Positions 25,836-54,780 of a stretch of DNA of 64,000 nt are shown one piece after another. The notes under the pieces were generated by a model. It searched no databases and was not told the DNA's origin. It worked only from the letters and a program-made list of their open reading frames with translations. Location of the stretch: assembly GCF_006345805.1 (NCBI RefSeq), contig NC_043007.1, positions 61,194,001 to 61,258,000 of the forward strand, written 5' to 3'. Each line of letters begins with the position of its first letter. Positions within the stretch are counted from its first letter, which is position 1. Source of the DNA: Octopus sinensis (taxonomy: Eukaryota). A program made the translations under genes and the position numbers.

Positions 25836-26066
25836 TACTGTTTATTTATTATTACGTACTTTTTGTGATCTAGATAAATGTTTTATCACGTATTTTATTT
25901 TTTCTATATGATATGTCTTATGTCTATCATTGTTTGAATTACATAATAGTCGTTTTCTCTAATCTCTATATATTATGTATTTATATTGTGAAATTTCATT
26001 TAATACTAAATTGAATTTTTCCCTGTAAGTTTGGAGTTAGACTCCTTAATATATATTATATATATG

Positions 26067-26099
<33 letters not shown>

Positions 26100-26147
26100 T
26101 TATATATAGATATTATATATGTTGTATATATATATATATATATATTA

Positions 26148-36335: not shown

Positions 36336-38888
36336 AATAACAACTACAACAAAACAAGGCTCTGAAAGGTCCATTACCACCTCTGCCGTCTATTAGATCA
36401 CTAAAATAACAAAAGAAATTATTCACTATTTCTAGGGAGTCTTTGGAGCAGAGCCTATTTCCTGGGTCCTCTTCAAGCTTAATTCAGTTATGTATCTGCC
36501 ACATGTGAAAGCTAATATAACTGTTAGCCATGCCACCTCTTGTGCATCCATAATTTACACTGAGCACACTATATGGAGTTTTTACTCACTACTTTTCTGC
36601 ATATTGAGTACAACCATTTCCCTGATGGTAGTAGAGTCCTGTCTTTTTTTTCTTCTTTCCCCTAAGTATTAACTTTAGTCTTGATTAAGTTTACTTCATG
36701 ACCCTTTGATTCCAGATTTTACTTTTTCTATGTCTGGTCCTTGAATGACTTTAGTGGACCCCAGTTTGTAACAATCTCTCAAGTTTCTCCCAACAATCTT
36801 GAAGGCTCTGGGAAAAAATATGGGCACAAATCTTCCTCCTCAGACCAAACAATTAAAAAGATAACATATATAACTTCAAAGAAGTATTAAGTGATACCTA
36901 TAATGAGAAGGTAGGGAAATAAAGTGATTATGATATAGAGAACAACTGGAGTTTCAATGAAATAACCTGTTGATGAAATTGTTGAGTAGATAGGTGTGTG
37001 CAAGCTAAGAGAATAAGCTTAAATGAGATGTAGTTTTTGGTTTGAGTCAGAAAAGGGACCTACAGAAATTCTTAGCTAAGAGCAAGCTAATATATCTAGT
37101 GAGCTGGCAGAAATGTTAGCATGTTGGGTGAAATGCTTAACGGTATTTCGTCTGCTGTTATGTTTTGAGTTCAAATTCCACCGAGGTTGACTTTACCTTT
37201 CATCCTTTCAGAGTCAATTAAATAAGTACCAGTTATGCACTGGGGCCGATGTAATCGACTTAATCCCTTTGACCTCTCTATGTTTAGCTCCCTGTGGGCA
37301 ATAAAAAACAAATATATCTATTATTTGCTGATATTTGAAAGCCTTCAAATAGTTGCTGAATTCATTGAGTGTAGATGAATAAATTGTGAGAGTTTTGCAA
37401 ACCCTGTGCAGCAGTGTTAGCAAAGTGAGAGATAATAATGAATTTAGTGAAGAATTTATAGTTGGAATAACACTATGTAATGCGATTTTTGTCCTTGGGT
37501 AGCTCCAGTATGTGATTAAATTTCACAGGAAAGAATCACAAGATGAATATTTCAAGTTAAGCAAACTGGCAGAAAACCTAGGGGCAGACCACAAATGATA
37601 CAGTTGGATAATATCCATAGTCTCAGTTAGTCATGCTTGGAAAGTTTAATGAGTTGCTTCTGGGAAGACCGCACTGGAGGAGGTGCCTGAGGACTTTACC
37701 TCCACAACATTTCCAGGAACAGTGGCTGGAGATGGAGGGATGGTATGAGTGAGATTATTTTCTTGTTGGAACTAGTAATGTTACATCTGGTTACCCTTCT
37801 TACTGCTAACAATCCAACTATGATTAAGAGAAAATTTTGTTTTTCTGCCGTCAGACCAACTATAGCTAGCAGGGTAGTATACCATGCTCTAAACACTACA
37901 ACGGTTCTAGTAAGATTTAAAACTGATAAACATGCTGTCAACAGTTGAATACTTTCCAAAGAGTCATTTATGTCTCTAATAATACTAAATATGATAGTAT
38001 GTCTTACTAATGTACGTTAGTGGTTTTGCTTATTTTGTTCGTTTTTGTCTGTTTTTTCCTGTTATGTGGGTTAAACAAATATGTTACTGAGGCATAGTTT
38101 TACAGCCAGTTACCTGTCCCAATGCTGATTCATATCTGTTTTTCAAGTAAGGGAACTCTTATTCTACATAGCTTCAAAGTAGGAATGATTTGACAGAAGT
38201 GTCAAGAAAAACACTGCTGGAAATTGTGTCTTTCATATAAGTGAACATAGATGTAAACAAACACAGACACACACGTGCATGCAAACACACACACGACAGG
38301 TGTCTTGAGGTCCTCCATCTACCGAATTTATCCAGGGCTATGACAAGTTTCTGTGCTGATGGACTGAACCTGAAACCACATGGTTAGGAAGTTCACTTCT
38401 TAACCAAATAGCTATGCTATTTATAAAGAGAGAGAGAGAGAGAGAAAGAAAAAGTTATTCAATCAATTGTTTTAAAGCTTGCTCTCTTTTAAGTTCAAAT
38501 TTTGAAAACAATTTCTTTAAAATTAAAGATTACATTTACAAACAGTATCTCATTCAAGTATACCAATAATCAACAGAGGTAAAATTTTTGGAGTTTTATT
38601 GTCTTTATTATTTCATTTTGATAAATAGTAGAGTCAGATATTCAACATGTTAAGATATTCAACATGTCAGGCATTAAAAAAGATCCCACCCAACAAAAAA
38701 AAACAAAAAACAAAGTGATATAGCTGTTTTAAGTGCTTTCAACCAAATTTCTGGTTTAAACTCTATTCTGCTTTACACACACACACACACACAAAAAGTG
38801 AACGAAGGGACATAACTAAGTGATTCAATTATCATTACGGTAATTGAGATTTAGTCCAATCAATGAGTCTAATAATACAGTTTAACAA

Positions 38889-39006
38889 CTATGCTTTTGG
38901 CAAGTTACTTTCTTTTTCTACATTTTGGATTACAGCTGTTTGAAAGGCTTGTCGTATTTCTCGCTGTTGAAATTTCATTTTAGAGTAGTTGTATCGGCAG
39001 AAAGAC
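38889..39006 (-). CDS. COX20: COX20 last coding exon (W)SFCRYNYSKMKFQQREIRQAFQTAVIQNVEKESNLPKA*
   Basis: ttcctcctttgtag acceptor, phase 2; matches COX20 W..CRYNY.K.R.Q; minus-strand AATAAA at 38595-38600 and 38604-38609. Confidence 0.92.
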
Positions 39007-40779
39007 CTACAAAGGAGGAAACAGACAGATGAATCACTGGAATAAATGTTTAATCTTTTCATTATTATATTTTTATTGAAATACACTGTCTTTGTTTCAA
39101 TTAATTTTGAAAGTAATGAAGAATTTAGTAAAATAACTGTGTTGCTATTCAGAATAATGAGAAATTTTGACTGGTTTTAATTTAAGCCATTTTAAACAAG
39201 AAGTTTGTATGATACAACCAGGGGCAGACTTAGGCAATTTGAAATCAAAAGGGTTAACTTTGATCATGATCATCACCAATATCATCAACCTGCACCAGCA
39301 GAACCACCACCATTTTAGCATCCACATTTGCTTGGGTTAGGCACAATTTGTTGTGGCAGATTTTCTCTGACATAATGCTCTTTGTCACTAATCTTTACTT
39401 GTTTCCAAGCAAAGTAGTATTTCCCTGTTGTTGGACATGTATACATAGGGAATTCGAAACAAACAGCACCACGTGTATGACAGTGACACTTTGTTTACAA
39501 TTTTCATATGGTGTCAAGACAAGGAGTCACAAACACACGCATACATGTGTACACATATATGTATATAAATATGTGTGTGTTTATACATACATATGTATGT
39601 ACATACACACGTGTACACACACACACACAAAATGAACTTCTTTCAGTGTCTATCTGGTTCAGGGCTATAGAAGAAGAAACCCACCCATCCACCTGCCTGC
39701 CTGCCCCAAAACCAACACAGTTGCTGGAAACTTAGTATGCATCACTTTGGGGACATGGGAAGAATCTGCACATAAACATCTGTCACTTTTGTTAGACTTA
39801 TGGTCTTGGTAGAAGCTTTCATCAGAAAAGAACCAAAGCATGCCATGTTTGCGAGGTTTTTTTTAACCTTGTTAAGTAACTGCTTGGCAGGGTCAAACAG
39901 TTTTCCTCTGTCTTTGCAGACATAAACTGGCCTCTCCTCAGTATATGCAACATATATTGAATGTCCTCATGCATCACTGTTCTGATAAACAACTTCAACA
40001 TCTGAAGTTCTCTGGCAAGGGGCCTTCACTAATTTTCTGGGGACATTACTGATAATGTTTTGAAACCATTGGATGAATTGTGGTGTCTTTAACAGTATCA
40101 GAACATGTAGAATGGTTTTTCACTTTGATATAGTTGAAACATTCCCACTAGGAGCTTCCAATTTCATCTGAACTTTGTGCACAAAAGATCTTTAGAAAGG
40201 TAGTAATTTCTAAATTGCAGTGTTCCAGAAATATGTCAACAATAGCAGCATGTCTTTATTTCTTGTGTTAACATTTTATCTGGCACTGAGGATCTGAAAG
40301 AAATAAAAACCTTTTAGTTGGTTTGAAGAGAGTGATATACTGATAATTAAACGTCCTCATATACCCCTTGTATCATGCATGTATATATATATGTGTGTGT
40401 GTGTATGTGTGCGCACACGTATGTATTTTCTTACACATATGTTTCAGATAAAACCCTTAACTCTGAAGAAAGACTCTGTCTGAAACATTGGATAATCTAC
40501 TCCTCTCAGAAATTTCACTGTACCCTACATTGCTGTTCTCAAATAATACAAGTCTTACAATGCAGACCACTACCACCAACATAATTCTCTTTGGACTCTG
40601 TTTTATCCAAAACATAACCAACATGCCATGACTGCTACAGTTTTGCACAATGGGTGTAAAGAAGTCTGAGTAATATAACCAAGGTTCAAGACTAACAGCT
40701 TGCTTTGAAGCCTTTTTATAGCAGACATTATATCATGAACTGAAATGATTTAGGAGACTCGATCAAATCAATAACTGCA

Positions 40780-41480
40780 TAGCAGAGGCTATTGTATTCC
40801 ATGTTGGTTGGACAGTTTGACAAGGATCCAATGAGTCGTGGACTGAATCATACTCCAATATTTGTTTTGGCATGGTTTTTACTGTTGGAAGTCCTTCCTA
40901 ATGCCAACCACTTTACAATGTGTATTGGGTGCTTTTTTCATGCCACCAGCACTATTGAGGGCACAATGTAGCTTGAAAGGCAATAAACCCAGGGAAGGAA
41001 GATGTTGCTTCTGTATGCTAGATGGGGGTTAAGGTATGAGGGAAGGATCTGCAGTTGATGGTATGATGTGGGGGGGATTGATTGATTAGGGTGCTCATAT
41101 ATATATGTATATACACACAGTCATATATACGTATACATGTACAATTTATCCCTAAGCAGAGCTTCTAGAAGTCAGTTTCATTATGATGGGTGGGCTTTCA
41201 TAAGAACCTTGCATCACTAGATATCCTGGTCCTTTTTCATTTCCTCTATGAGGCTCAGGGTTCTAAGGTTACCATTCATTTCATCTTATATCTTCCTAGC
41301 ACTTCTTTGTTCACAGGCTCCAGTCACATTCAGTGATCCACACTTCTTTATACAGCTGTCCTCATCCATAAGCATCACATGTCTGTACCAGTGCAGTCTT
41401 CTTTCTTGTACTCTATATCTAATTCTTCTTATGCCTAGTCTTTCTCTCAGTACATTTATAATATGACATTCATATATCTC
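40780..41480 (-). mobile_element. Decayed RTE C-terminus and 3' tail
   Basis: Degenerate LREK.GIRG...RRL.WY.HVM.MDEDSCIKKC-like sequence at 41300-41470 and the shared 3' tail (AAAAAGCACCCA...TTAGGAAGG) at 40780-40960. Further decayed RTE pieces at 36480-36800 (-) and 37330-37690 (+). Confidence 0.6.
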
Positions 41481-41501
41481 TATGTGAGTATGAGTATATA
41501 T

Positions 41502-41537
<36 letters not shown>

Positions 41538-41539
41538 CT

Positions 41540-43570
41540 TGCTATGAAGGTAAAGGTGATGTCTTAGATAGAAATAATTATAGAGGTATCAAATTGTTGG
41601 ATCAGGTGATGAAAGTTGTGGAGAGAGTCATAGCCCAACTAATCAGGGAGAGAGTTAGTCTAGATGAGATGCAGTTTTGCTTTGTGCCAAGTAGAAGCAC
41701 CACAGATGCTATATTTTTGGTAAGGCAACTTCAGGAGAAATATCTAGCCAAAGATAAACCTCTGTACTTGGCTTTTGTTGACTTGGAGAAAGCTTTTGAC
41801 AGAGTCCCCTGATCCATTATCTGGTGACCAATGTGGAAACTAGGGATAGACGAGTGGTTGGTGAGAGCTGTACAAGCCTTGTACAGGGACACTACTAGTA
41901 AGGTGAGGGTGGGCAACGAGTACAAGTAAGGGTTTACCAAAGATTGGCGCTCAGCCCCCTCTTGTTCATCATAGTCCTCCAGGCAATAACAGGAATTCAA
42001 GACAGACTGCCTCTATGCTGATGACCTTGCTCTTATAGCTGAATCATTACCTGAGCTAGAAAAGAAGTTCCAGGTAGGAAACAATGTCTAGAATCAAAGT
42101 TAGAGTTAACCTAGCAAAAACCAAAATCATAGTAAGTAGGAAGGCAGACAAAAATCCCCTCAGGTAGATGGCCCTGCTCAATCTGTAGAAAAGGTGTAGG
42201 TAGAAACTCCATAACATAAACCCGTGTAAGCTTTGGATACACAAAAGGTGCAGCAACATCAAAGGAAGGTTAACAGAGAAACTAACTTTTGTATGTGGAA
42301 GGTGCACAGGCATAATAAATGCTGAACATGTGCAGAAAATTTAGTCCATCAACTGCCAGGGGATGAGTTAGAGGTAGTAGATAGCTTCTGGTATCTAGAG
42401 GATCAGGTTAGTAGAGGATCAGGTGGTTGTTCCAAGTGGACAGCTACGAGAATAAGATTAGGCTGGGCAAAGTTCAGAGAGCTCCTACCCTGCTGGCAAC
42501 AAAGGCCTCTCTCTCAGAGTGAAAGGCAGATTGTTTGATGCCTCTGTGTGAACAGCTATGCTGCATGGTAGTGAAACATGGGCAATAACAGTTGAGGACA
42601 TGTGTAGGCTTGAAAGAAATGAAAGCCAATATGCTTCACCAGATGTGCAATGTCAGTATGCATATTCGACAGAGTGTAAGCATCTTGAGAGAAAAGTTAG
42701 GCATAAGAGGAATCAGATGTGGTGTGCAAAAGAGACAACTGCACTGGTATGGTCATGTGATGCATATGGACGAGGACAGGTGTGTAAAGAAGTGTTGATC
42801 ACTAACCGTGGAGGGAACCTGTGGTAGATGTAAACCCAGGAAGACATGGAACAAGGTGGTGAACTTTGAACCTCACAGAGGCAATGACCAGTGACCGAGT
42901 CCTTTGGCAATGTGCTCTGGTTAAGAGGACCCATCAAGTCAAGTGCACTCTTGCTAGTGGCACGTAAAAAAAATCAACATTTGGATGTTGGGCATCATAG
43001 AGGCAAAGTGACTAAGTACCTTTTGAGCATTGGGTCTGATGGAAGCAAAGTGGCTGAGTTCTTTTCAAGTTTGGGCCTCACAGAGGCGAGGTGGCTGAGT
43101 TCCTTTCGAGCATTGGACCTCATGGAGGCAAAGTGACTGAGTTCCTTTCAAATGTTGGCCTCACAAAGGAGAGGTGGATGAATTCCTTTTGAGTGGGCCT
43201 CACGGTGAGGTGGCTGAGTTCCTTTCAACTGTTGGGCCTCATGGAAGTAAAGTGGCCGAGTTCCTTTTGAGTGCTGGAGGCAATGACCAAGACTTTTGGC
43301 ATTATGTTGTGCTTGAGAAGAAGACCCATCAAGCCGAGGAAAATCGCAATTGTGGCAGATATTGATGTCTTGCAAATGGCACTCATGCCGGTGGTGCGTA
43401 AAAGCACCAATTACACTCTCAGAGTAGTTGGCATTAGGGAGGGCATCCAGCTGTAGAAAACCATGCCAAATCAGACTGGATCCTAGTGCAGCCTACCAGT
43501 GTGCCAGCCCAATCAAACTGTCCAACCCATGCCAGCATGGAAAATAGATGTTAAATGATGATGATGATGA
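41540..43570 (+). mobile_element. Decayed RTE LINE (RT to 3' end) in COX20 intron 3, with ~39-bp minisatellite (about 42986-43280) and (TGA)n tail
   Basis: LLDQVMKVVERVIAQL...AFVDLEKAFDRVP, YADD, MLHGSETWA, LHWYGHV; starts right after (TA)n. Confidence 0.9.
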
Positions 43571-43812
43571 TATATATATATATAACTTTGATAGGTTTCG
43601 GCCAGTATAGGCCCAGGCTGTGCCAGGTTTTTTTACATTTTCTCTCTGCCAAATCTACTCACAAGGTTTTGATCAACCAAGATTATAGCATAAAAAACTT
43701 GTCTAAGCTGCTGCACAGTGGGACTGAACCTGTTACCACATGGTTGGGAAGTGAACTTCTAAACCACACACCAATAGTGCTTATGACTAGAGATTCCAAA
43801 GTTCTACCCTGG

Positions 43813-43850
<38 letters not shown>

Positions 43851-44353
43851 AGATATTGCTATTGTTAGTCTTTGCTCACCCCTTATTGGGATGAATTCTA
43901 CTTGAAGATGTTCTAGATATGACAAACCCTTCTTATTTTCAGATGTAGTATATCTAGGACTACATTATTCAATGTGCCTTTCTGTTTCTAAGACAGTTAT
44001 GTTTGATATAAGGAACACTTGGCTGCTACTTCTGGGAAGTTGGACAATATTTTTGGCATACCCTCTTTTGATTTATAGTAATAACTATCAATACAGATGC
44101 TGAAGAAGTTAAAAAGATATTAATAAATCATTAGTCACCTTTTAAGAGAAGCTATAGAGGTAGTGAAGATGATCGAATTCAGTGTGGATTAAATGTTTTA
44201 TAGTATTTTCATCATGTCTGGTTCTGTGTTGTTTGTTATTTCTATGGCTTTGATACAATAAGTACTAACAATATATAAAGGTGATTGACAATGAAATACT
44301 ACATAAAGTTTGTAATTAGGGAATTTGGTGGCTGTTACTTAATTATCACTTAC

Positions 44354-44416
44354 CATGATGCTGTAGCTAGGATAGCGTATGTTCCAACTCCAACATGGGT
44401 TGCCACCCGTACATTG
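44354..44416 (-). CDS. COX20: COX20 exon 3 (S)NVR-[apparent 1-nt deletion]-xATHVGVGTYAILATAS(W)
   Basis: ttatttttcag acceptor and GTAAGT donor; homologous to human RIRRSCDVGVGGFILVTLGCW (recalled); 63 nt as sequenced, whereas phases 1 to 2 require 3n+1 (64). Confidence 0.85.
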
Positions 44417-44441
44417 CCTGAAAAATAACAAAAGTATACAC

Positions 44442-44482
<41 letters not shown>

Positions 44483-44486
44483 TATA

Positions 44487-44622
44487 GCAGCAAAAAATAT
44501 CACAAAAAAATTAGTTTCAGGTTCCCATTCGTCAGACAGTTTTGTTTAAAATTCTAAACAAAACTGCCCGATGAACAAGAACGTGAAACTCTGAGTAACA
44601 GTTTTTGTGATATTTTTGCTGC
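44487..44622. repeat. Imperfect palindrome of two head-to-head PLE-type hammerhead motifs
   Basis: Arms GCAGCAAAAAATATCACAAAAA...GTTTCAGGTTCCCATTCGTCAGACAGTTTTGTTT and AAACAAAACTGCCCGATGAACAAGAACGTGAAAC...TTTTTGTGATATTTTTGCTGC around an 8-nt loop. Confidence 0.85.
44560..44605 (+). ncRNA. Degenerate minimal type I hammerhead (CCGAUGA core variant)
   Basis: Stem I AAAACUG/CAGUUUU, core CCGAUGA 44568-74, stem II ACA-AGAA-CGU (one mismatch), GAAA 44585-88, near-palindromic CUCUGAG, GUA site after 44597. Confidence 0.6.
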
Positions 44623-44946
44623 TTTTCAATAAAGCACATTACTCTACCTCTGGTATTTGAGTACTATTTTTTCTGCCCTGTTTCGCATTTATGTGCTTAC
44701 TCCGATCGATATATATATATATATATATATATAATTTTGTGAAATAGAAAGATGAATAATCTTGTAGTAGATTAATCAACAGTTTAACCGATACCTTAGT
44801 AGCAAAAATCACAGCAGTAAACAGCACGGTTGGAGGTACAACCATCTGGCGTTGCAACCGTGCGTTGGTGTGGATAATTGAAATTAAAACATTATTGGTG
44901 AATTGAAGAAATGGAGCTGAACGCGGATTGAACAGAAATCGTTTTA

Positions 44947-45035
44947 TTTCATTCTACACGTGTTTCGAAAGGCACAAATTACCAAAATCCGATTGAATAA
45001 TGGGACCATATTGTGTCTTTCTCTTCAGGAAGAAA
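44947..45035 (-). ncRNA. Minimal type I hammerhead ribozyme, left-arm copy (COX20 sense strand)
   Basis: Exact reverse complement of 47335-47423. Confidence 0.8.
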
Positions 45036-45699
45036 AAAGGAAATCCGTTGGAAAAACAAAAACAGAACAGAGGCGGAGCAAAAAACAAATCGAACTGTGC
45101 TCCTAAGAGCCCATGGCGAAACTGTTTATCAGTGTATGTTGAGAACCGGTGGCTGAAGAATTCAACGGGTCAGGCATCGGTCAATCATGTGGGTGAGGGT
45201 GTATAGATGTTCTTTGTGACCGAGAATAAAGATCTGACTATTTAAAGAATATTGGATGTTTTATAAGTGGCGAGAAAAAATCTACTTAGAGACGTGTGTG
45301 TGTGTATACTGTTCTATATATGTGTGTGTTGGCGTAGGGGTAGAAAACATTTTTTGTGTACGTGTGTGCGTTTGATCGTTCGGCTGTCAGTGGCTACTGC
45401 CGTGATAACCGTTGGGTGGCAGAAAGAAAAAAATAAAAAAATTATATATATATATTATGTTTTATGTGTGTGTGTGTTCATCTAAGCCTACCTTGTCAAG
45501 GAAACCTCCCGCTGTGAAAAAACCAAGCCCCGTTTGTCTTACAGGAGTAATTCCCCTTGCAGTGGTCAATCGTAGATATCTTAAAGGCTATTTCAGAATT
45601 TGTTACCAAGGGCTATGGGTGCCGGTATTATTTATAAACGCTATTTAAAGGCCAGATAAGTGTAACGCCGCCAATGGGGGCATCGCAATGGGGGCATCG

Positions 45700-46730
45700 C
45701 AGGCCGGTTATAGGCAGAAGGTAATTTATATTGATCCGGCCCTTCCGATGCCATCATTCGGTCATCAGGATAGGGCCGTATATAATAACATTAACATTTT
45801 AAGTAAGGACGGGAGCGCGGCGGATGCCGGGGTAGTCGCTCCCGCATTTAATTTAGCGAATAAGGACAATTATCGGTTCGGGAGGTCTTACACTAACCCA
45901 AGACCCGTTATTCATCCGAGAATCACCCACCCGAATGCGAGAGCTGGCGTCCCGACCCATCACACTGATAGGAATAAGCATATATGGTTTGTAATCCCCT
46001 TTGGTAAGCAGATTAGAACTAACCTCCCCCTCATGTTTAGACAAGCCAGGGAGTACCCACTAGGGGTATAGTTATAAATAGGGGTGTTGTGGTTGACGGT
46101 AACAATGGGAGTAGGGTAGAGAGCCCCATTAGCATCCCCAGCATCATTTCCCGCAATAGCAGTACCACGGGCAGTAGCAATGACAGCACTCTGATAGATA
46201 GTGGAGAATCAGGGGTTATTCCTATAGTTAATAGTGACGTAGTGGAAAATAGAGTAGTAAGCGGCTGCAGGTCTCGGAACGAATATAGTGACAGGAACGC
46301 AGTTCTAATTTCAGAAACCAATCCTAGCAGATTAAGATTCACGTCGGCGAACTCCAAGATCAAAAACGCCGTCTACCAATGCAAGGTTTACACGGACTCA
46401 GATGCCTTCACTTATGTAGGGGCATCATCCTCAAGATTGTCTTTGCGTGTCTCCAACCATTACGCAACTTTTCGGGACGTGAACAAGCGCCAGACCACGG
46501 GACTCAGTAAGCTAATATGGCGACTGAAGGATGCGAACTTAAGCTATAGGCTGGAATGGTCAATTTTGTCGGTGGCCCTCCCATTTGATAGGGGCAGAAG
46601 ACAGTGCAACCTTTGTGTCTCCGAACTCTTCCATATTTTGTTTGCCAGAGGCCGGATGGTAAACGGGCTCTTACAGTCGGCTTTTCGATGCCCCCATTGG
46701 CGGCGTTACACTTATCTGGCCTTTAAATAG
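45700..46730 (+). pseudogene. PLE ORF C-terminal part: RT-thumb/linker remnant plus GIY-YIG endonuclease, one frameshift near 46045-46060, no RT core
   Basis: AGYRQKVIY and KHIWFVIPFGKQIRTNL match PLE SGY..K..Y and IIWFNPP.S..V.TN.G; then AVYQCKV..YVG, RVSNHY, LSKLIW.LKD, W.IL, CNLCVSE, N, RCPH. Confidence 0.88.
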
Positions 46731-47334
46731 CGTTTATAAATAATACCGGCACCCATAGCCCTTGGTAACAAATTCTGAAATAGCCTTTAAGATATCTACG
46801 ATTGACCACTGCAAGGGGAATTACTCCTGTAAGACAAACGGGGCTTGGTTTTTTCACAGCGGGGGGTTTCCTTGACAAGGTAGGCTTAGATGAACACACA
46901 CACACATAAAACATAATATATATATATAATTTTTTATTTTTTTCTTTCTGCCACCCAACGGTTATCACGGCAGTAGCCACTGACAGCCGAACGATCAAAC
47001 GCACACACGTACACAAAAAATGTTTTCTACCCCTACGCCAACACACACATATATAGAACAGTATACACAAACACACGTCTCTAAGTAGATTTTTTCTCGC
47101 CACTTATAAAACATCCAATATTCTTTAAATAGTCAGATCTTTATTCTCGGTCACAAAGAACATCTATACACCCTCACCCACATGATTGACCGATGCCTGA
47201 CCCGTTGAATTCTTCAGCCACCGGTTCTCAACATACACTGATAAACAGTTTCGCCATGGGCTCTTAGGAGCACAGTTCGATTTGTTTTTTGCTCCGCCTC
47301 TGTTCTGTTTTTGTTTTTCCAACGGATTTCCTTT

Positions 47335-47423
47335 TTTCTTCCTGAAGAGAAAGACACAATATGGTCCCATTATTCAATCGGATTTTGGTAATTTGTGCCT
47401 TTCGAAACACGTGTAGAATGAAA
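47335..47423 (+). ncRNA. Minimal type I hammerhead ribozyme, right-arm copy (PLE sense strand)
   Basis: Stem I UUUCUUC/GAAUGAAA (1 bulge), CUGAAGA 47342-48, stem II GAAAG-A-CACAA/UUGUG-C-CUUUC with long loop, GAAA 47404-07, palindromic CACGUG stem III, GUA site after 47415. Confidence 0.82.
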
Positions 47424-47500
47424 TAAAACGATTTCTGTTCAATCTGCGTTCAGCTCCATTTCTTCAATTCACCAATAATGTTTATATATATATATTATAT

Positions 47501-47535
<35 letters not shown>

Positions 47536-47562
47536 GCATATATATATATATATATATATATA

Positions 47563-47604
<42 letters not shown>

Positions 47605-47611
47605 TATATAT

Positions 47612-47930
47612 ATGGCTTAGTGGTTTAGTGTATTTGGCTCACAATTGTAAGGTCATAAGTTCAATACCTGGTAGTGCATTGTGTCCTAGAACAAGACACT
47701 TTATTTCACATTGCTCCAGTCCATTCAGCTGGCAAAAATGAGAAGTACCTGTAATTCATAGGACTAGCCTTGTCACATTCTGTGTTGCGCTGAATCTCCC
47801 TGGGAACTATGTTATGGGTATGTGTGTCTGTGGAGTGCTCAGCCACTTACACATTAATTTCACAAGTAAGCTGTTTCATTGATTAGATCAATTGGAACAC
47901 TCATTGTTGTAACTGATAGAGTACCAGTTA
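47612..47930 (+). mobile_element. tRNA-derived SINE, family C (GTCC.TGAGCAAGACACTT body)
   Basis: GGCTTAGTGGTTTAGTG...AGTTCAATACC head followed by TGTGTCCTAGAACAAGACACTTTATTTCAC; related piece at 28797-28925. Confidence 0.6.
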
Positions 47931-49065
47931 TACAGGGTGTCCTAGAATTAACTGTCTATTTCAGTGAAATCAAACAATTTTCTAAAAAACTCACTTTTAT
48001 TTATGCTTATCATGTGTAATATGTGTTAAAAGTGGATAGATTTTTTATTTTGTTTATAATTTTTATAATTCTATTTTCATTCCTGTTGGATCTTACTTCT
48101 CTGTCCACGACAGCTTTTTATCAATTTGGCTGCAATCATTTTCTCTACCTCCATCTCCAGGATGGAGCAACAATTTAGCTGAATTTAAAGAATGCATTCA
48201 GTTAGCAGTAGTCCTCTACAGTATCCCTAATGGCAATGATTGCAGTAGAAGTAAGCTCACACAGTGTGATATTTTGATTGAGATTTTGGCATGACTAGTA
48301 TCTCTTCCTATAATCAGCAGTGGTAACCATAGTATGGACTATTTTTCATAAAAACAGCATAAGAGGAACTCTCTTACAAAACTTAGAGCATTCTCTGATC
48401 CTTAGCAGTCTGAATATTTTTGATTAAGACAATAATAAATGGATCAAATATGTTTGTCATGAAAACAACCAGTGGAGAAGTTCATTGTCTAATCTTGAAG
48501 ATTTTGCTATCCAACTGCAACTTGAGTATAAAGTGATTGATCTAGCATAGTCGGTAGTAGACCAAGGTTGATGATTCATTTTATCTAATTCAGCTTCCTG
48601 AACTTGATAAAATAGCACAAGTAATATGCTTTGTTAAATCCAATTGGTTTTTACCCATTCCTGTCCCCACTACCAAAGCCTTTCATTCACACTTTTTCAA
48701 GGCAGTTAATTCTTTCACAAAGCAGAAGGATCTATGGGGCTGGTACTCAGCTCTTGTGTTCTGTAATGTTAAAAGATAAATCTTCATTTGCATACCACTA
48801 TTATATTGGAAGGTATTTCTTTGTGAATTTAGTAGTACACTTAACCCAGGATAGCTCAGGTTACCTGATAGCATGCTCTGTTCAGTACTATGAAATAAGA
48901 CCCAAATAAGAGTCCTTAAAAGAACTTAGATGACACCGGAAAGCATTCACATCTTTTTAGTTACAAAAACCATGAGCAATGTGTCAGTTAGTGTAACCAA
49001 TTCTACTCCACAATCAAAATAAATCAGTATATAAATAAATAAAACAATAAAACATTGAAACTTAC

Positions 49066-49156
49066 TAGTAAATAAAAAATATGCCAAACCACCAATTATA
49101 CCGCTACTCAAGCCAGTCAGAAGTGAATTCCGCATACAGGGTATGTTGGTTATACT
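49066..49156 (-). CDS. COX20: COX20 exon 2 SITNIPCMRNSLLTGLSSGIIGGLAYFLFT(S)
   Basis: ctttgtttctag acceptor, GTAAGT donor, phase 0 to 1; IPC.R.S.L.G...G.....FLFTS is the COX20/FAM36A signature. Confidence 0.93.
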
Positions 49157-49310
49157 CTAGAAACAAAGAAAGCAAAAAAATACTGAGTTAATACATAAGA
49201 TCCAGCATGTAAGAAATATTGTTTGAAAATTTGGCATAAGCCAGCAATTTCTGGGGAGTGGGCAAGTCGATTACATCGAAACCAGTGCTCAACTGTACTT
49301 ATTTTATCGA

Positions 49311-49538
49311 ATCAAGGTAAAAAAAAAGGTCACCATTTAAAAAAGTCCACGGGAAAAAAAGCCACTGGGGTTTCCGGCGGGTGTGTCCGTCCTAGGGGGG
49401 TTTTGTCCGGATCCCATAAATTGTGACTCTTTTTCCTGTGACTTATTTTCCTAGTCAACATTGTGAGTTTATTACTGTGACTCTTTTTTTTTCTAAGCCA
49501 AAACTGACTTTTTTTCTTGGACTTTATTACCGGTCACC
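49311..49538. mobile_element. 228-bp MITE-like insertion with a 10-bp TSD inside a family-A SINE (49220-49670, -)
   Basis: ATTTTATCGA at 49301-49310 and 49539-49548; the SINE sequence resumes after it; repeated (G)TGACT(T/C)TTTT subterminal motifs; left terminus degenerate. Confidence 0.75.
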
Positions 49539-49549
49539 ATTTTATCGAC

Positions 49550-51700
49550 TCTGAGAGAATGAAAAGTAAACACAACCTCGGTTAAATTTGAAATCAAACC
49601 ATGAAGACGGACGAAATACCGTTAAGCATTTTGTCAGGCGTGTTGACGATTCTGCATCTACCACCTTCAACATATAAGTAATATTAATCTATAAATACAG
49701 TATATATTTACGATACTAATGAGTCGTTTTTGGTTAGGTTAGACTCACGATAAACTTCAAATGTTTGACAGAGTAGTTTCCCTTATATCTTGGCTCTAAA
49801 ATCTTCAAAGAAATTCAAGCGACAGAACTGAAGGAATACTGAGAATATTTTTGAAGAATTCAGCTACATGAAGTGATAGAAATAGAGCATATGTAGCGAT
49901 AAATGGGAAGTGGATTTAAGAAGAGAAAGGAATACTTATGGAAAGTTCAGCTGAGTAGAGTTTGGTGTTCGATTAAAACTGTTTCAGGTCAAACTTGATT
50001 CAGTAGATTTATGATCAAAATCACTCCAGCTTTGACTAACGTGTCTTTTACTCAGTTATTGTATATTTGGGTTAAAGTTGGAGCATATTTGCCAATAAAG
50101 ATGATGGCATTCTCCTTTCGAAAGGATTTGGTATCCATCGAATTTCACTTGAAACATCGCAGTGTTACATAACGATCACACATCTTCCATGTATTGATAT
50201 ACGTTTCTTTCAATGATCCTAAATCAACCCTGCACATTCGGAAATTAAATATGCCATTCACTGCATATATTTATATTTATAATATAAATCATGATTAGGA
50301 GACAAGGAATGATTTTGATCTTGCATTTACAGGTGTAATGTGTGCATGAGTGCAGAGTGAAGGTTACCGTAAGTTTTGTTATTAATGCTCGTATTATGCA
50401 GCCTTAAAAATCTTCCTAAAATAATAAAAAATATTTGGCATAACTACAGATGCCAAATATTATTATTATTTATTATAACTGATATTACTGTATTCAAGTA
50501 AACTTTTCTTTATATTAAAAGGATAAGAGTAATTAAAGCAAATATTATAAATAATTTCAGAATGGTCCAAGAAATTAATAACCGAAAATATTTTAGTAAT
50601 TTAGAATTTCAATACAAGAACAATTTCCTTTCACTAAAGAATTTATTATTATTATTATCTTTTTCGGATGTATTAAATAGTAATCGTTCTAATGAAATAT
50701 GAATACTGTCGAGGGAAATTTTTACCTGACTTTTTTCATCAGTTTCTTCTATATTATTGTCAGACATTGGGAATCTTTTACTATAATCAGTAGACTTAGA
50801 ATCTGTATGCGAAATGAATCCTCACTGGTTAGAATATTACTTAAAGTATAATAGCATCGCTAGTCACAAAGTAAACATCGTTCTTCCAAACAAAACATGC
50901 GGTCGCGATTTAAATGAGGGAAGAAAGCAGAACGATAACTCTTGTTATTCCTCTCCCCGCCCCCAATTATGTCACCTTGAAACAAGATTTTACAATAGAT
51001 CTAAGCTCTTCGAATTAGGAATAGAAACTATTTTTATTTTAGCCTTTTGTCAAACATGACAATACAAATGATTTAAGTTATTGAACGATGTACGCAGAAA
51101 TTTTGTCAATAATTGAAATTTCCAAAGAGAAAACGAAAAAGAAAAGAAACCCTCTACAGTAATCGTTGGTGACTGCTAAAGAAGGGAGATAATTTCATTT
51201 CACGAAATTTGCATGCTAAAAGGAAAATCTAAAGGTTTGAATGAAGGGACAGCGACGAACATGCTTTGATCTTATTGAGCCTCCTTATCATAGCATAGTC
51301 TATTCAAATCAGCTTTGGTCAATCGACATAGGTTGACCAGTGGTAATTAAAAAACAAATAAACAAAAAAGACATAAAATGACCTAAGGGAAATAACTCAA
51401 GTAAATCAGTAGTAAGAATTTAGACAATATACATTTTCTGATAGTTTAAAATCAATGAAATAATTATTGTAAGACTGAAAATTACTTGAAAGCAGGATCA
51501 AAACACAAGAGAGACCCGCCATAAAAAAGACATTCGCTAACAATAAATTGAAACATTCGCTAGTTTAGTTGTGTTCAATCGTACAAAGATATACTGTGGA
51601 ATACCCCAAGTCCAAAAGTTTAAAACGAATTTACAAATTTATATATATATATGGATCTTATCAGTACAAAATCTTAAAGTACAACGCATTAAAATCTGTT
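49550..51700 (-). promoter_or_regulatory. Probable unmethylated promoter/first-exon region of COX20
   Basis: CpG dinucleotides visibly more frequent than in flanking non-TE DNA (qualitative, not counted); brackets the COX20 ATG; GC-box-like CCCCGCCCCC near 50955. Confidence 0.45.
50726..50767 (-). CDS. COX20: COX20 exon 1 coding part MSDNNIEETDEKSQ
   Basis: ATG at 50767-50765, CAG|GTAAAA donor, phase 0, acidic 14-aa N-terminus; lies in a CpG-retaining region. Confidence 0.78.
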
Positions 51701-51806
51701 GTAATTGTAACTCCCAAATAAGCATTAAACAAAATTAAATTAGAAAACTGGACAAAACAGAGAACACAATTGAAAAGAAAAAAGCAAACCAAAACAATTC
51801 ACCGCC

Positions 51807-52600
51807 TTATGTTGAAAAGTTGGGGGTGCTGAGAAACCTCTCTAATGGCTATTGAGGCATGCCAGCACGCTTGCAGCATTGCTGCAGGTGATGACAAGGC
51901 TGGTGTGCTGGAATAGCTAAGTGCCCAACCGAGCCTCACAAGTTACTACTGCTAGGCGAATAGCCAAGGAAGACAGGAATTTTGCATTTAGTGGTCCAAC
52001 CCCACCAAACATCTCGAACGCCACAGGATGGAAAATGTAGTTGGCCAACAGATCGCAGTATTTCAGGATTTTGTTCTGCTTGGCCACAGAAGCTGTGGAT
52101 CTCACTCTGACCGCAGCATCCAGGATGTGAGAAGCAAAGGAGTTCCTAACTGTGACATCCCAGATAAGGCATCTGCCTTATGACCAGGGGCACAGGTTGA
52201 GGCCGTCAGGTCTTTTCCCACCACATCTGGACAATCTAGATGGTTCCAAGATGGAAGGGATGTTTGCCCAGGCCAAGCTCCTCTTGAGTATCAGGTTGAA
52301 CTCTATATGATGCGTGAAGCGACCAGCATTCAAGCAACAAGAAAGACCATGGAGGCCTGTGGAGTTGAGGATCCTGCCATGACGATAGATCAAACCCATG
52401 CATATGTCAGCTCCCTCTCTTAGAGCAAAGAAGACATGAAGTTCATTCAAGCTGAGTAGGTCACCAACATGAGCCACAGGGATGGCATCAATCTAGTCAC
52501 CTGAATATTTGGTGCTAGCAGACAGTATGTGGCACCTTGAAAACTAGTCCGACTGGATGAAGAGGGAGTCAAAGGTGGCCTTACACAAGTGCCACAGCAT
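51807..52600 (-). mobile_element. CRE-like (restriction-like endonuclease) non-LTR retrotransposon 3' fragment
   Basis: GLHGLSC...GRFTHH..N.ILKRSL..ANIPSILEP..L.R.GGKRPDG..L.PW, then K..KY.DL...YIFHPVAFE.FG; stops present. Confidence 0.8.
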
Positions 52601-52949
52601 ACAACGTTCACAAACAATTATACAGAATGATATGCCACCAATATTTTTGTTTGTAAAGTATTTTCATTACTGTCACTATCTAGCATGGTGAACCATATCC
52701 CACTTTCCTTACCTACTGCTTCCTCTCTAATAGTATCTTGTTAACTAGAGTCTAATAAACTAAAGTGTGCATTTCTTGTTCAATGCAGCATCCCTAGTTA
52801 CATACAAGAAATCCAGAGCTTCTTGTGATAAGCACCAGATGCCACTGCCCTATTTTGTCTTCGAATATCTTTTTCATTGTTATGCAAAATATTTACTCAG
52901 GGAATAAACTTTAAATAAAATTTAGCAGCATATTTTCTCTGCAGATAAA

Positions 52950-53480
52950 AAGCATGATGTTATAATTACAATGATTTCCCAGAGACAGTTTAACACAGCT
53001 TCTACATCATTTTGATGACATTTTAAATGTTTTGTGATAGGTCCCAATACAGATGTCATACACTTTGATTTCAACAAAGCTTGCTTTGGGAGAATAAAAA
53101 TAAATAAAAACGCTATCCAGTATGGCATTTGGTGAAAAAGGATCAAATATTTCCTGGTCTAGTAGGCATGTCCCAACATGTGATTACTGGAATTCTCTCA
53201 AGCTCAGCTAGTCAGTGGTATAGTTCAAGGCACTGTGTTTGGCCTACTTCTCTCCATAATTTACATAAATAGTATCACAAATATCATCAAAGACAGCAAA
53301 ATGAAAATTTCCATAAATGACTCTTAAGTAGTTTTAGAAAGTTATTAATAGGGTAAGAGATAGGACAAAATTCCAATCTAGCTTACATTCAATTGGTAAA
53401 GCAAAACAATATGCTGCTTGATAAGGAAAAATTTGAGTTCATTCACATTGGAAGAAAGGATCTACTTAAACAGCCACATT
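52950..53480 (+). mobile_element. Decayed CR1-type RT fragment
   Basis: LLHHFDDILNVL..PNTDVIHFDFNKA and GIVQGTVFGLLLSIIYINSI resemble CR1 RT motifs (DVIYLDF.KAFD; GVPQGSVLGPLLF.IYIND). Confidence 0.6.
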
Positions 53481-53539
53481 CTCATCTCTCAAGAGAACCT
53501 CTCATAGTGACATGCCCATTGTTAACAGGGTGCACTTGA

Positions 53540-54780
53540 TGGCACTGGTCCCTCACTATTCAATGGTGCACCCTCAAGTTTACAGTGATACTCTTAATTC
53601 AAAACTGCATGTACTGCAGCTATTATTCTGATTGTTAGAGCAACTTACCACCTCATATACGATCCCCTAGGCCTTGCATTGGCCTCCCACTGGATTGTAC
53701 TCCCAGCATGAGCAACCGGCCTCTGTTTGTATGTTAGGGATGTTCACTAAAATTGTTTTAATGCTAGGTGTGTAACTATAGGAGACCCTTAGGTTGTAGC
53801 TATTGAACAAACGCCTGTGCCTGTGTGGCTGCATGAAGTGCTTGTCCACAAACCTAAGGAAGATCCTTCCCACACAATTTTTAACATTAATAGAGAAGGG
53901 TGGGAGTAAACCAAATAACATTCCAGTGGGTGTTTTCTTTTGTGGGTGCTGGGGCCTGGCATACCGATATGGTCCTTAAACCCACTGGACACCAGAGCCT
54001 TGTTATAATAGAGGGCTGTGGCATTTAAAATCTCTTGATTCAGGGACAGGTTTGAGACCCTCTTGCTGACACCCTTCACTAGGTTCCTGAACATGATAGC
54101 CAGGTGGCCAGAGGTAGCGTTGATGTAAGACAGTTTCTTGTTTGGCTTGCAGTAGGGCCTGTATAAACCAAAGCCTAAATCTAGCATGATGTCTAAGAAA
54201 TTTACAATGGTGAGATTGGTCACAATTGTTATTTTGAGTCCCATGGAGCCTAGGGTGCTAGTTAGGTTCTTCCTAAGTCCATCAAGGGTGTGCCTATCAG
54301 CTCCTGTAGAGCATCATCTCTGTAGACACCAAAGAGGACCTCTTCTTTAAGGTGTCCAGGATATATAGCCCAATGAGGTTACATATGTCGGCACTGTCAT
54401 AAGCTCCCATTGTCACATCAAAGGAGCCCACGAGGTTGGTTTGTTTGACCCAGGTCAAACATTTATCAAACAGTATTATTTTCCTGACATGCATAATAAT
54501 GTCAATGTTACTATTGCTAATGTCAATGAAGCCACTAGTAAAGGAAAGTATCTTGACCAGTAACCCTTTTGACATAAGTAAAAGTCGTCTATGTTGAATT
54601 CAGTGAGCCTTGCTCTACTCCTCCTCTGGTTGGCATTAAGCCATGAAATTAGTTTGATGGTGCTGTACCTTAGGGAAAGGTTGGAGGTACTTCTTATGTT
54701 ATCATTAATTTTCCTCAGTATTTTTTTCGCTCACCAGACTGATCTTGGATTTAGTCACTACTTACTGCAAGCGTGGGGAT
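53540..54780 (-). mobile_element. Decayed Penelope-like element (RT core, thumb, start of GIY-YIG)
   Basis: FDVTMGAYDSADICNLIGLYIL, VNFLDIMLDL..GLYRPY.KPN, PPFSINVKNCVGRIFLRFVDKHF, FNSYNLRVSYSY, GIVYEV; many frameshifts. Confidence 0.88.

What the first reader, a model, noticed from the sequence alone, without database searches (positions are those of the whole stretch)
44733..47483. Penelope-like element with ~800-bp near-identical inverted arms inside intron 2 of COX20
Seen: arms 44887-45685 and 46686-47483 differ at only about 4 positions and enclose exactly 1000 bp of GIY-YIG-coding core. The element has (TA)n on both sides and ends about 320 bp from the COX20 exon 3 acceptor. Established: 5'-truncated PLEs often carry an inverted pLTR. 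Inference: every COX20 pre-mRNA from this allele can form an ~800-bp duplex with a 1-kb loop, a potential ADAR hyper-editing substrate (cephalopods edit heavily) or endo-siRNA source, possibly affecting exon 3 splicing.
Basis: partly seen in the sequence, partly recalled or inferred. Interest (0 to 1): 0.72.

Follow-up and report, generated by a model that had tools for sequence, protein, structure and literature searches.

The report
Inverted Penelope-like retroelement in octopus COX20 intron
A dead, recently inserted Penelope-like retrotransposon, made of two truncated copies joined head to head, sits in a TA-repeat inside intron 2 of the Octopus sinensis COX20 gene and is absent from two sister species; this is textbook behaviour for such elements, and its proposed effect on COX20 RNA is untested.

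Summary
Arms 44887-45688 and 46683-47483 are 802 nt and 99.4% complementary (4 mismatches, 1 indel) around a 994-nt core. (TA)n lies on both sides. COX20 is on the minus strand, and the element ends 316 nt from the exon 3 acceptor.

The window is Octopus sinensis (GCA_006345805.1). The orthologous loci of O. vulgaris and O. bimaculoides are empty sites with an uninterrupted (TA)n.

It is a defective Hydra-clade Penelope-like element (PLE):
- a C-terminal GIY-YIG endonuclease ORF with CxxC and CxH motifs;
- a hammerhead ribozyme motif in each arm;
- (TA)n targeting;
- two 5'-truncated copies joined head to head;
- a 154-nt 3' tail on the left copy only, which argues against a fold-back assembly artefact.

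There is no reverse transcriptase, and the ORF has a frameshift and an internal deletion.

In the COX20 pre-mRNA the arms are predicted to pair almost completely (794 of 802 bp). Editing, small RNAs and splicing effects could not be tested here.

Verdict: a real but ordinary, lineage-specific transposon insertion, and a new member of a known kind.

The parts
44709..44733 (.). Left remainder of the target (TA)n microsatellite
   Evidence: O. vulgaris and O. bimaculoides have one uninterrupted (TA)n here.
44734..44886 (-). 154-nt 3' terminal 'tail' of the left (inverted) copy. It is absent from the right copy.
   Evidence: Part of the inserted DNA by the empty-site comparison. Window 44709-45042 aligns in one piece with the 3' end of an O. 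sinensis relative, L005 6730-6400, at 74.5% over 337 nt; that copy also ends in (TA)n.
44887..45688 (-). Left arm: an inverted 5'-truncated copy, consisting of the last 16 codons of the endonuclease ORF plus the 3' UTR
   Evidence: 802 nt, 99.4% complementary to 46683-47483.
44947..45036 (-). Hammerhead ribozyme motif of the left copy, in the same sense as the COX20 transcript. Predicted cleavage is between 44955 and 44954.
   Evidence: Mirror image of the right-arm motif.
45672..45699 (+). Head-to-head junction: CAATGGGGGCATCG occurs twice in tandem. The first copy is the inner end of the left arm. The second is the first 14 nt of the core. The reverse complement is at 46679-46692.
   Evidence: Read directly from the sequence. 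Consistent with joining by microhomology or a template switch (inference).
45689..46682 (+). Unique core: the 5'-truncated body of the right (+) copy. It holds a remnant of the linker between reverse transcriptase and endonuclease, then most of the endonuclease domain.
   Evidence: Frame of 45688-46071 reads GYRQKVIYID...KHIWFVIPFGKQIRTNLPLMFRQA, colinear with relatives. It then shifts frame, and about 270 nt are missing relative to L005 (window 46047-46115 against L005 4856-5198).
46089..46730 (+). 213-aa ORF ending in the GIY-YIG endonuclease domain (about 46353-46727). Its natural stop codon lies 48 nt inside the right arm.
   Evidence: 17 of 19 near-invariant family residues are kept, including Y, YxG, R, H, E, N, CxxC and CxH.
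46683..47483 (+). Right arm: the end of the ORF plus the 3' UTR of the right copy. It ends at the 'short' 3' end, directly against (TA)n.
   Evidence: The relative L001 ends at the same short site against (TA)n.
47334..47423 (+). Hammerhead ribozyme motif (type I). It has the CUGAAGA and GAAA cores, an 11-bp helix II, and a loopless palindromic helix III (ACACGUGU). Predicted cleavage is after A47415.
   Evidence: Rfam Hammerhead_1, full model, 14.8 bits, E=0.77 in 204 nt, below the gathering score. My descriptor matches only PLE 3' regions in about 150 kb searched on both strands. The motif is conserved in L001 and L005, with 90.9% of cells paired and 7 pairs changed on both sides, against 37-54% paired in the slid controls.
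47484..47613 (.). Right remainder of the target (TA)n, followed by the head of an octopus tRNA-derived SINE (47614 onward)
44354..44417 (-). COX20 exon 3 (acceptor AG at 44419-44418, donor GT at 44353-44352)
49066..49156 (-). COX20 exon 2. Intron 2 (49065-44418) is 4,648 nt here and 1,836 nt in O. vulgaris.

Best explanation
This is one insertion of a non-autonomous copy of a Hydra-clade Penelope-like retroelement into a (TA)n microsatellite in intron 2 of Octopus sinensis COX20. It occurred after the split from O. vulgaris or is still polymorphic.

The 2,750-bp insert is two 5'-truncated cDNA copies of the same element joined head to head.
- The right copy (45689-47483, + sense) starts in the linker between reverse transcriptase and endonuclease. 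It runs through the GIY-YIG domain and the 3' UTR.
- The left copy (45688 down to 44734, - sense) starts 16 codons before the stop. It runs through the same 3' UTR and continues 154 nt further.
- The 802 nt that the two copies share are the 'arms'.

Most likely mechanism (inferred). The element's GIY-YIG nuclease cut both strands of the TA repeat, and reverse transcription was primed from both ends. One priming used the proximal internal start site on the RNA and the other used the distal one. That explains the one-sided tail. The two cDNAs were joined at a short microhomology, seen as the 14-nt duplication at 45672-45699.

The copy is dead on arrival. It has no reverse transcriptase, a frameshift, and an internal deletion of about 270 nt.

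For the host, the insert lengthens intron 2 from about 1.8 kb to 4.6 kb. It also puts a near-perfect 800-bp hairpin with a 1-kb loop, and one sense-oriented hammerhead motif, into every COX20 pre-mRNA from this allele. The expected default outcome is removal with the intron, with some A-to-I editing of the stem and no effect on the protein.
For: Shown:
- Arms and core.
- The window is an exact match to O. sinensis GCA_006345805.1 CM016869.1.
- O. vulgaris (98-99.4% identical flanks) and O. bimaculoides have empty sites with an uninterrupted (TA)n exactly where 44734-47483 sits.
- The ORF belongs to a large family: 2,497 phmmer hits and 2,922 relatives of the 658-aa member P0028, mostly about 700 aa on contigs of 2.3-3 kb.
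- Pfam GIY-YIG is hit above the gathering score at the C-terminus of P0211. Precomputed RVT_1 hits exist in some members.
- The AF2 model has pLDDT 89.6 with beta-beta-alpha-alpha-beta-alpha order. Its top PDB matches are T4 EndoII, Hpy188I and I-TevI.
- The family motifs match the published description of the Hydra clade (PMC8557442): no CCHH, CxxC and CxH around the conserved E and N, (TA)n insertion, elements under 3 kb, and hammerhead motifs.
- The hammerhead motif shows covariation across three diverged copies.
- The 154-nt tail is genuine element 3' end, by homology to L005.
- Colinear relatives L001 and L005 have no long inverted repeat. The arms are therefore specific to this insertion, not a family-level terminal repeat.

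From the literature:
- Inverted 5'-truncated partners and one-sided tails are characteristic of PLEs (PMC8557442).
- A purified PLE protein cleaves and extends both DNA strands and starts reverse transcription at two internal sites, which define the tail (PMC11167929).
- 336 recently active PLE insertions are annotated in O. vulgaris (PMC13282606).

Hairpin: 794 of 802 arm pairs in the predicted fold.
Against: - No read-level confirmation. The only assembly that holds the insertion is the one the window comes from.
- No full-length master copy of this subfamily was found, so the truncation points and the internal deletion are judged against relatives only 60-75% identical.
- The ORF itself gets no Pfam, NCBIfam or PDB sequence hit. 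Foldseek E-values are weak, 0.18-1.9.
- The hammerhead scores below Rfam's gathering threshold and was not detected at larger search sizes.
- This octopus subfamily lacks the CxCX5C linker listed for the Hydra clade.
- Priming from both strands is extrapolated from an Anolis Poseidon element studied in vitro.
- The tail is 154 nt, much longer than the 30-40 bp described for other PLEs.
Confidence: 0.85

Rival explanations
1. The inverted left arm is an assembly artefact. A fold-back or chimeric long read would have been built into the O. sinensis PacBio assembly, and the real allele would carry only a simple 5'-truncated PLE, or nothing.
For: The only assembly with the structure is the source assembly itself. 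Near-identical inverted duplications are a known failure mode of long-read assemblies (general knowledge). Complex PLE structures are noted to trouble assemblies (PMC8557442).
Against: The left copy carries 154 nt of genuine element 3' end that the right copy lacks, so it cannot have been copied from the right arm. Both flanks are colinear with O. vulgaris and O. bimaculoides, with the COX20 exons in order. The junction is a clean head-to-head join inside element sequence, not a palindrome of local flanking DNA. The arrangement is the expected one for PLEs.
Confidence: 0.05
2. Two independent insertions of the same PLE family went into the same (TA)n tract in opposite orientations, rather than one event.
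For: (TA)n is the preferred target of this family (PMC8557442), so repeated hits on one tract are conceivable. The two copies have different 5' truncation points and different 3' ends.
Against: There is no (TA)n or other target DNA between the copies; they abut exactly, with a 14-nt duplication. Their shared 802 nt differ by only 0.5%. That needs the same source element at nearly the same time. No other copy of this subfamily lies in the 64-kb window.
Confidence: 0.07
3. It is a DNA transposon or foldback element with 800-bp terminal inverted repeats that happens to carry a GIY-YIG gene.
For: The overall shape is long inverted termini around a short coding core, flanked by TA.
Against: The arm includes the last 16 codons and the natural stop of the ORF. 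The core plus right arm is colinear with non-inverted relatives L001 and L005, which have no long inverted repeats. The termini are asymmetric because of the 154-nt tail. Relatives encode a reverse transcriptase upstream of the nuclease. Hammerhead motifs are present, as in PLEs.
Confidence: 0.02
4. This adds to the main explanation rather than excluding it. The intronic hairpin matters for the host. It would be hyper-edited by ADAR, or diced into small RNAs against this PLE family. It might also measurably change COX20 exon 3 splicing or transcript output.
For: The predicted stem is near-perfect, about 800 bp, with perfect runs of up to 374 bp. Pairing of nearby inverted repeats is the conventional source of hyper-edited dsRNA across metazoans (PMC9989829). 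The stem starts 470 nt upstream of the exon 3 acceptor.
Against: No RNA data could be examined. The insert leaves the acceptor, the polypyrimidine tract and the branch-point region untouched, at 316 nt distance. The annotated O. sinensis protein uses normal junctions. Most intronic inverted repeats are edited without phenotypic effect (general knowledge).
Confidence: 0.3

Closest known systems
Hydra clade of Penelope-like elements (Craig, Yushenova, Rodriguez & Arkhipova 2021, PMC8557442)
   Same: C-terminal GIY-YIG nuclease without the CCHH motif. [quoted passage not shown] Short elements (relatives are about 700 aa on contigs of 2.3-3 kb). Hammerhead motif. Insertion into (TA)n. Tandem or inverted arrangements with a one-sided tail. 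Mollusca are among the listed hosts.
   Different: The octopus subfamily (window copy, L001, L005, P0003, P0004) has lost the CxCX5C linker motif, which is replaced by an N/S-rich low-complexity stretch. The tail is about 154 nt rather than 30-40 bp. This particular copy has no reverse transcriptase.
Poseidon PLE of Anolis carolinensis, PAc (Frangieh et al. 2024, PMC11167929)
   Same: It provides the mechanism invoked here: cleavage and extension of both target strands, preference for AT-rich DNA, and two internal reverse-transcription start sites that define the optional tail.
   Different: A different PLE clade and host. The result is in vitro. Its tail is 30-40 bp. No inverted product was characterised in what I read.
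L1 'twin priming' inversions in mammals (Ostertag & Kazazian 2001; from my own knowledge, not checked here)
   Same: Two primings on opposite strands of one target give a 5'-truncated, partly inverted insertion joined at microhomology.
   Different: In L1 the two segments come from adjacent, non-overlapping parts of the RNA, so no long inverted repeat results. Here both copies start from the 3' region, so 802 nt are present twice.
Intronic inverted Alu pairs as ADAR substrates in primates (general knowledge; principle cited in PMC9989829)
   Same: An intramolecular dsRNA formed by nearby inverted repeat copies within a pre-mRNA.
   Different: Alu stems are about 300 bp and 10-20% diverged, and they arise from two independent insertions. 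This stem is 800 bp, 99.4% matched, and arose in one event. Editing was not demonstrated here.

Membership tests
Penelope-like elements, Hydra clade | GIY-YIG endonuclease domain at the C-terminus of the single ORF | tested here: met
   The window ORF is homologous to the C-terminal 120 aa of family proteins. P0211 reaches the Pfam GIY-YIG gathering score at residues 599-639 of 718. The AF2 model has pLDDT 89.6 and its top PDB matches are GIY-YIG nucleases, with weak E-values. The Y, YxG, R, H, E and N residues are retained. Pfam does not hit the window ORF directly.
Penelope-like elements, Hydra clade | [quoted passage not shown] | tested here: met
   C93-x2-C96, E99, N112 and C121-x-H123 in the 133-aa segment 46329-46727. 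Description in PMC8557442 section 11.
Penelope-like elements, Hydra clade | CxCX5C zinc-finger-like linker upstream of the GIY-YIG domain | tested here: not met
   Present in most relatives as CNCRxxxxC, but absent from the window copy and its closest relatives P0001-P0004. Those have no cysteines there and carry an N/S-rich stretch instead. I read this as loss within a subfamily inside the clade, not as exclusion from it, but no phylogeny was done.
Penelope-like elements, Hydra clade | PLE-type reverse transcriptase upstream of the nuclease | tested here: inconclusive
   This copy is 5'-truncated and keeps only about 130 codons upstream of the nuclease, colinear with relatives. Relatives such as P0028 carry YRDD and DKT motifs, and a few have precomputed RVT_1 hits. 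My own Pfam and PDB scans of P0028 found no reverse transcriptase, and no RT phylogeny was made.
Penelope-like elements, Hydra clade | Hammerhead ribozyme motif in the untranslated or pLTR region | tested here: met
   A type I motif with a complete catalytic core at 47334-47423(+) and 45036-44947(-). Rfam Hammerhead_1 gives 14.8 bits, below the gathering score of 34. The structure is conserved with compensatory changes in L001 and L005. The descriptor is specific to PLE 3' ends. Self-cleavage was not tested.
Penelope-like elements, Hydra clade | Insertion into (TA)n microsatellites | tested here: met
   Empty sites in two species show an uninterrupted (TA)n at the insertion point. Relatives L001 and L005 also end in (TA)n.
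Penelope-like elements (general) | Complex insertion structure: a 5'-truncated copy with an adjacent inverted 5'-truncated copy, and a tail at one end only | tested here: met
   Feature as described in PMC8557442 and PMC11167929.
Terminal-inverted-repeat DNA transposon or foldback element | Inverted termini shared by all family copies, a transposase, and a fixed target-site duplication | tested here: not met
   Colinear relatives lack long inverted repeats. There is no transposase. The termini are asymmetric. A target-site duplication cannot be read within (TA)n.
ADAR hyper-editing substrate (long intramolecular dsRNA) | A long, near-perfect duplex within one transcript | tested here: met
   794 of 802 arm positions pair in the predicted fold of the COX20-sense RNA. 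The arms alone give -1506 kcal/mol. This is a prediction only.
ADAR hyper-editing substrate (long intramolecular dsRNA) | Clusters of A-to-G mismatches between RNA and DNA on both arms | not testable with these tools
   No RNA-seq reads could be examined.

The most novel reading that the evidence does not exclude
The insertion is a natural hairpin transgene in a housekeeping gene. Every COX20 pre-mRNA from the insertion allele would carry an 800-bp perfect stem. That stem would be hyper-edited and/or diced into small RNAs that silence this PLE family in trans. It might also lower or alter COX20 output, by exon 3 skipping, by intron retention, or by cleavage at the sense-oriented hammerhead. 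O. vulgaris would then serve as a ready-made empty-site control for dsRNA biology in a heavily editing animal.
Probability: 0.12. Interest if true: 0.55.

Novelty: new member of a known kind. Interest (0 to 1): 0.3.

Why it matters
Mostly this is a clean worked example rather than a discovery. It gives a PLE insertion with base-level boundaries, set by two empty-site orthologues. It shows both 3' ends facing outwards, a one-sided tail and a microhomology junction. These are the in vivo footprint expected if a PLE nuclease cuts both strands and reverse transcription starts at two alternative internal sites, as proposed from in vitro work.

Two smaller points may interest PLE specialists:
- This octopus subfamily has lost the zinc-finger-like linker proposed to direct (TA)n targeting, yet three of three copies examined end in (TA)n.
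- Its 'tail' is about 154 nt rather than 30-40 bp.

For cephalopod biology, the site offers a testable, species-specific long dsRNA inside a nuclear-encoded mitochondrial assembly gene. There is no evidence yet that it does anything.

Tried and rejected
- Pfam on the core ORFs and on six relatives gave no GIY-YIG or reverse transcriptase hit. NCBIfam gave nothing.
- A profile of the family and P0028 alone against PDB sequences gave nothing meaningful.
- The word-indexed protein search with the 213-aa ORF found nothing. The exhaustive search was needed.
- Exact-sequence look-ups of three window ORFs, made to find other assemblies or copies, were all 'not on record'.
- Rfam found no hammerhead at 4.5-kb scale in the window or at 5.5-kb scale in L001. 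The motif appeared only in a 204-nt search, below threshold, and in my own descriptor.
Its probability was only 3.7%, so I count it as no more than motif-level agreement.
- MFE folding of the hammerhead region alone did not recover the ribozyme fold (z = -0.24). This is expected for a motif with a loopless helix III, thought to act as a dimer.
- The supplementary files of Craig et al. 2021 are not held, so I could not check whether octopus families are already listed in the Hydra clade.
- The Naiad clade (N-terminal nuclease, also (TA)n-targeting, reported as old remnants in cephalopods) was considered and rejected. Here the nuclease is C-terminal, with the natural stop just after it, and hammerhead motifs are present.
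Full report

Yes. The repeat finder reports two abutting inverted pairs that together make one repeat. A gapped alignment gives arms 44887-45688 and 46683-47483. They are 802 nt long, with four mismatches (44925/47445, 45300/47070, 45507/46864, 45686/46685) and a 1-nt indel at 45435. BLAST gives 99.4% identity and finds no further copy in the 64-kb window. The unique core is 994 nt (45689-46682). (TA)n lies at 44709-44733 and 47484-47613.

**2. Host gene**

COX20 is on the minus strand.
- The sequence shows canonical splice sites and consistent reading phase for exon 2 (49156-49066), exon 3 (44417-44354) and exon 4 (39006-38889).
- The joined translation hits Pfam Cox20 at E=6.3e-14, with 52 bits against a cut-off of 25.
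- It is identical to the corresponding part (residues 15-104) of O. sinensis XP_029642997.1.
- Exon 1 is at 50767-50726.

The element therefore lies in intron 2, and its left end is 316 nt from the exon 3 acceptor.

**3. Source and empty sites**

The O. sinensis COX20 locus (L011, GCA_006345805.1, CM016869.1) matches window 35889-53767 exactly. The window is this assembly.

The O. vulgaris orthologue (L004) aligns at 98-99.4% identity, but it jumps from window 47522 to 44733. The O. bimaculoides orthologue (L003) jumps from 47597 to 44722. At the site both species have only an uninterrupted (TA)n, between the conserved 'GCTTACTC...' and the head of a SINE, 'GGCTTAGTGG'.

The inserted DNA is therefore 44734-47483, 2,750 bp, inside a pre-existing TA microsatellite. 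Intron 2 is 4,648 nt here and 1,836 nt in O. vulgaris.

The arms differ by 0.5%. The flanks differ from O. vulgaris by 0.6-2%. Both figures fit an insertion after the species split, or one that is still polymorphic (inference).

**4. What the core encodes**

Pfam finds nothing in the core ORFs, and the word-indexed search failed. The exhaustive phmmer search of the 213-aa ORF (46089-46730) found 2,497 proteins at E<=1e-3.

Longer hits (P0028, P0014, P0147, P0053, P0041) show one architecture:
- a tail of a reverse transcriptase-like region ('FLDVT...YxPYxKPN...SNHP');
- 'KRKxIIWYNPPF';
- a CxCX5C motif;
- then 'VYxAxV...YIGxT...R..NH...LSKxIWxLK...CxLCxxEK..I...N...CRH' and a stop.

The window ORF ends at the family's natural C-terminus ('RCPHWRRYTYLAFK*'). 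That end lies 48 nt inside the right arm.

Upstream, the frame of 45688-46071 reads 'GYRQKVIYID...KHIWFVIPFGKQIRTNLPLMFRQA'. This is colinear with relatives and starts exactly at the junction. A frameshift follows. About 270 nt that are present in relative L005 are missing (window 46047-46115 against L005 4856-5198).

**5. Is the domain a GIY-YIG nuclease?**

- The family member P0211 reaches the Pfam GIY-YIG gathering score at residues 599-639 of 718. P0204 falls just below it.
- An AlphaFold model of window 46329-46727, built with 108 relatives, has pLDDT 89.6 and a beta-beta-alpha-alpha-beta-alpha order.
- Its best PDB matches are T4 EndoII, Hpy188I, I-TevI and PD-T4-3, all of which I know as GIY-YIG nucleases. 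The E-values are only 0.18-1.9, and the TM-score is up to 0.59 on I-TevI.
- The window copy keeps 17 of 19 near-invariant residues, including the catalytic Y, YxG, R, H, E and N.

**6. Family assignment**

Craig et al. 2021 (PMC8557442, section 11) describe the Hydra clade of PLEs as follows:
- short elements (under 3 kb);
- a C-terminal GIY-YIG domain lacking the CCHH motif;
- a CxCX5C linker;
- a DKT motif;
- canonical hammerheads;
- insertion into (TA)n in almost all families;
- hosts that include Mollusca.

The protein family found here fits these points. There is one exception. The window copy and its closest relatives (P0001-P0004, at least two of them from O. sinensis) have no cysteines at the linker position and carry an N/S-rich stretch instead.

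**7. Hammerhead motif**

A hand scan found CUGAAGA...GAAA on the element's sense strand at 47342-47407, and its mirror in the left arm.

Rfam Hammerhead_1 matches 47336-47421 over the whole model at 14.8 bits. That is below the gathering score, with E=0.77 in a 204-nt search.

The motif has G10.1-C11.1, an 11-bp helix II with a large loop, and a loopless palindromic helix III (ACACGUGU). This is the form that, from memory of the PLE hammerhead literature, acts as a dimer.

A stricter descriptor matched only PLE 3' regions in the window plus all fetched loci. The same motif sits at the same distance from the 3' end in two diverged O. sinensis relatives. On the three-sequence alignment, 90.9% of cells pair and 7 pairs change on both sides. 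In the slid controls 37-54% of cells pair.

**8. Architecture of the insertion**

Relative L005 aligns in one piece with window 44709-45042 at 74.5% over 337 nt. This stretch covers the outer left arm, the 154 nt at 44734-44886, and the (TA)n. The 154 nt are therefore the element's true 3' terminus. They are present only in the left copy.

The right copy stops at a 'short' end against (TA)n, as does relative L001.

At the inner junction, CAATGGGGGCATCG occurs twice in tandem (45672-45699). Its reverse complement forms the inner end of the right arm.

L001 and L005 have no long inverted repeats. The arms are thus a product of this insertion event, not a family feature.

The published PLE literature describes this pattern: an inverted 5'-truncated copy next to the main copy, and a tail at one end. 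A purified PLE protein also cuts and extends both strands and starts reverse transcription at two internal sites that define the tail (PMC11167929). I infer a single event primed from both strands.

The one-sided tail also argues strongly against a fold-back assembly artefact.

**9. Consequences for the host**

The COX20-sense RNA of the insertion is predicted to fold at -1825 kcal/mol, with 794 of 802 arm positions paired to each other. Perfect runs reach 374 bp.

Pairing of nearby inverted repeats is the conventional source of hyper-edited dsRNA in metazoans (PMC9989829). Some editing is therefore likely. Nothing here measures it, nor small RNAs, nor splicing.

The left copy places a sense-oriented hammerhead in the pre-mRNA, but in the hairpin it would be sequestered.

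Recent PLE activity in the O. vulgaris genome is already documented: 31 families and 336 young insertions (PMC13282606). A young PLE insertion in an intron is therefore not surprising.

**10. Verdict**

The observation and the structural interpretation are confirmed and sharpened. The functional inference is plausible but untested and generic. The finding is an ordinary, well-resolved transposon insertion. It is a new member of a known kind and of modest interest.

Noticed in passing
window 44513-44590: A 78-nt near-perfect hairpin in COX20 intron 2, about 100-170 nt upstream of the exon 3 acceptor. RNA MFE is -43.2 kcal/mol with z = -10.5. It is single-copy in the sequences held and conserved at the orthologous place in O. 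vulgaris (98.9%) and O. bimaculoides (91%). Rfam gives only sub-threshold miRNA-family matches. It could be a MITE remnant or an intronic miRNA-like hairpin.
   Followed up: partly
window 53634-54730 (minus strand): A second, older fragment of a Hydra-type PLE, covering the reverse transcriptase region (residues 98-485 of P0028), 3-4 kb upstream of the COX20 start codon. At least its first ~270 nt (up to window 53848-53900, where the fetched orthologous loci end) are also present in O. vulgaris and O. bimaculoides, so it predates their split.
   Followed up: partly
window 46329-46400; L001 10540-10620; L005 5390-5470: The octopus subfamily of this PLE has lost all cysteines of the CxCX5C linker that precedes the GIY-YIG domain in other family members. 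Even so, the window copy, L001 and L005 all end in (TA)n. This bears on the published suggestion that the linker directs (TA)n targeting, unless these copies were mobilised in trans.
   Followed up: partly
window 44734 and 47483; L001 about 11662; L005 about 6699: This family has two alternative 3' ends about 154 nt apart. The short end is in the window's right copy and L001. The long end is in the window's left copy and L005. It looks like the PLE 'tail', but is several times longer than the 30-40 bp described.
   Followed up: partly
window 45672-45699 and 46679-46692: A 14-nt tandem duplication (CAATGGGGGCATCG) sits exactly at the head-to-head junction of the two copies. It is the reverse complement of the codons for RCPHW near the ORF end. 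Without a full-length master copy I cannot say how much of the second copy is native sequence.
   Followed up: partly
L004 (O. vulgaris GCA_951406725.2, OX597824.1): The O. vulgaris COX20 gene model (P0152, 94 aa) skips the first 10 codons of exon 3, reading 'FLFT|IGTYAIL'. The O. sinensis and O. bimaculoides models read 'FLFTSNVR.ATHVGVGTYAIL'. This is probably a mis-predicted acceptor in that annotation.
   Followed up: no
window 32152-33891 (minus strand), 26031-27015 (plus strand), 47614-47900: A 579-aa LINE-type reverse transcriptase ORF and a second, degraded copy of it, plus an octopus tRNA-derived SINE directly abutting the target (TA)n.
   Followed up: no
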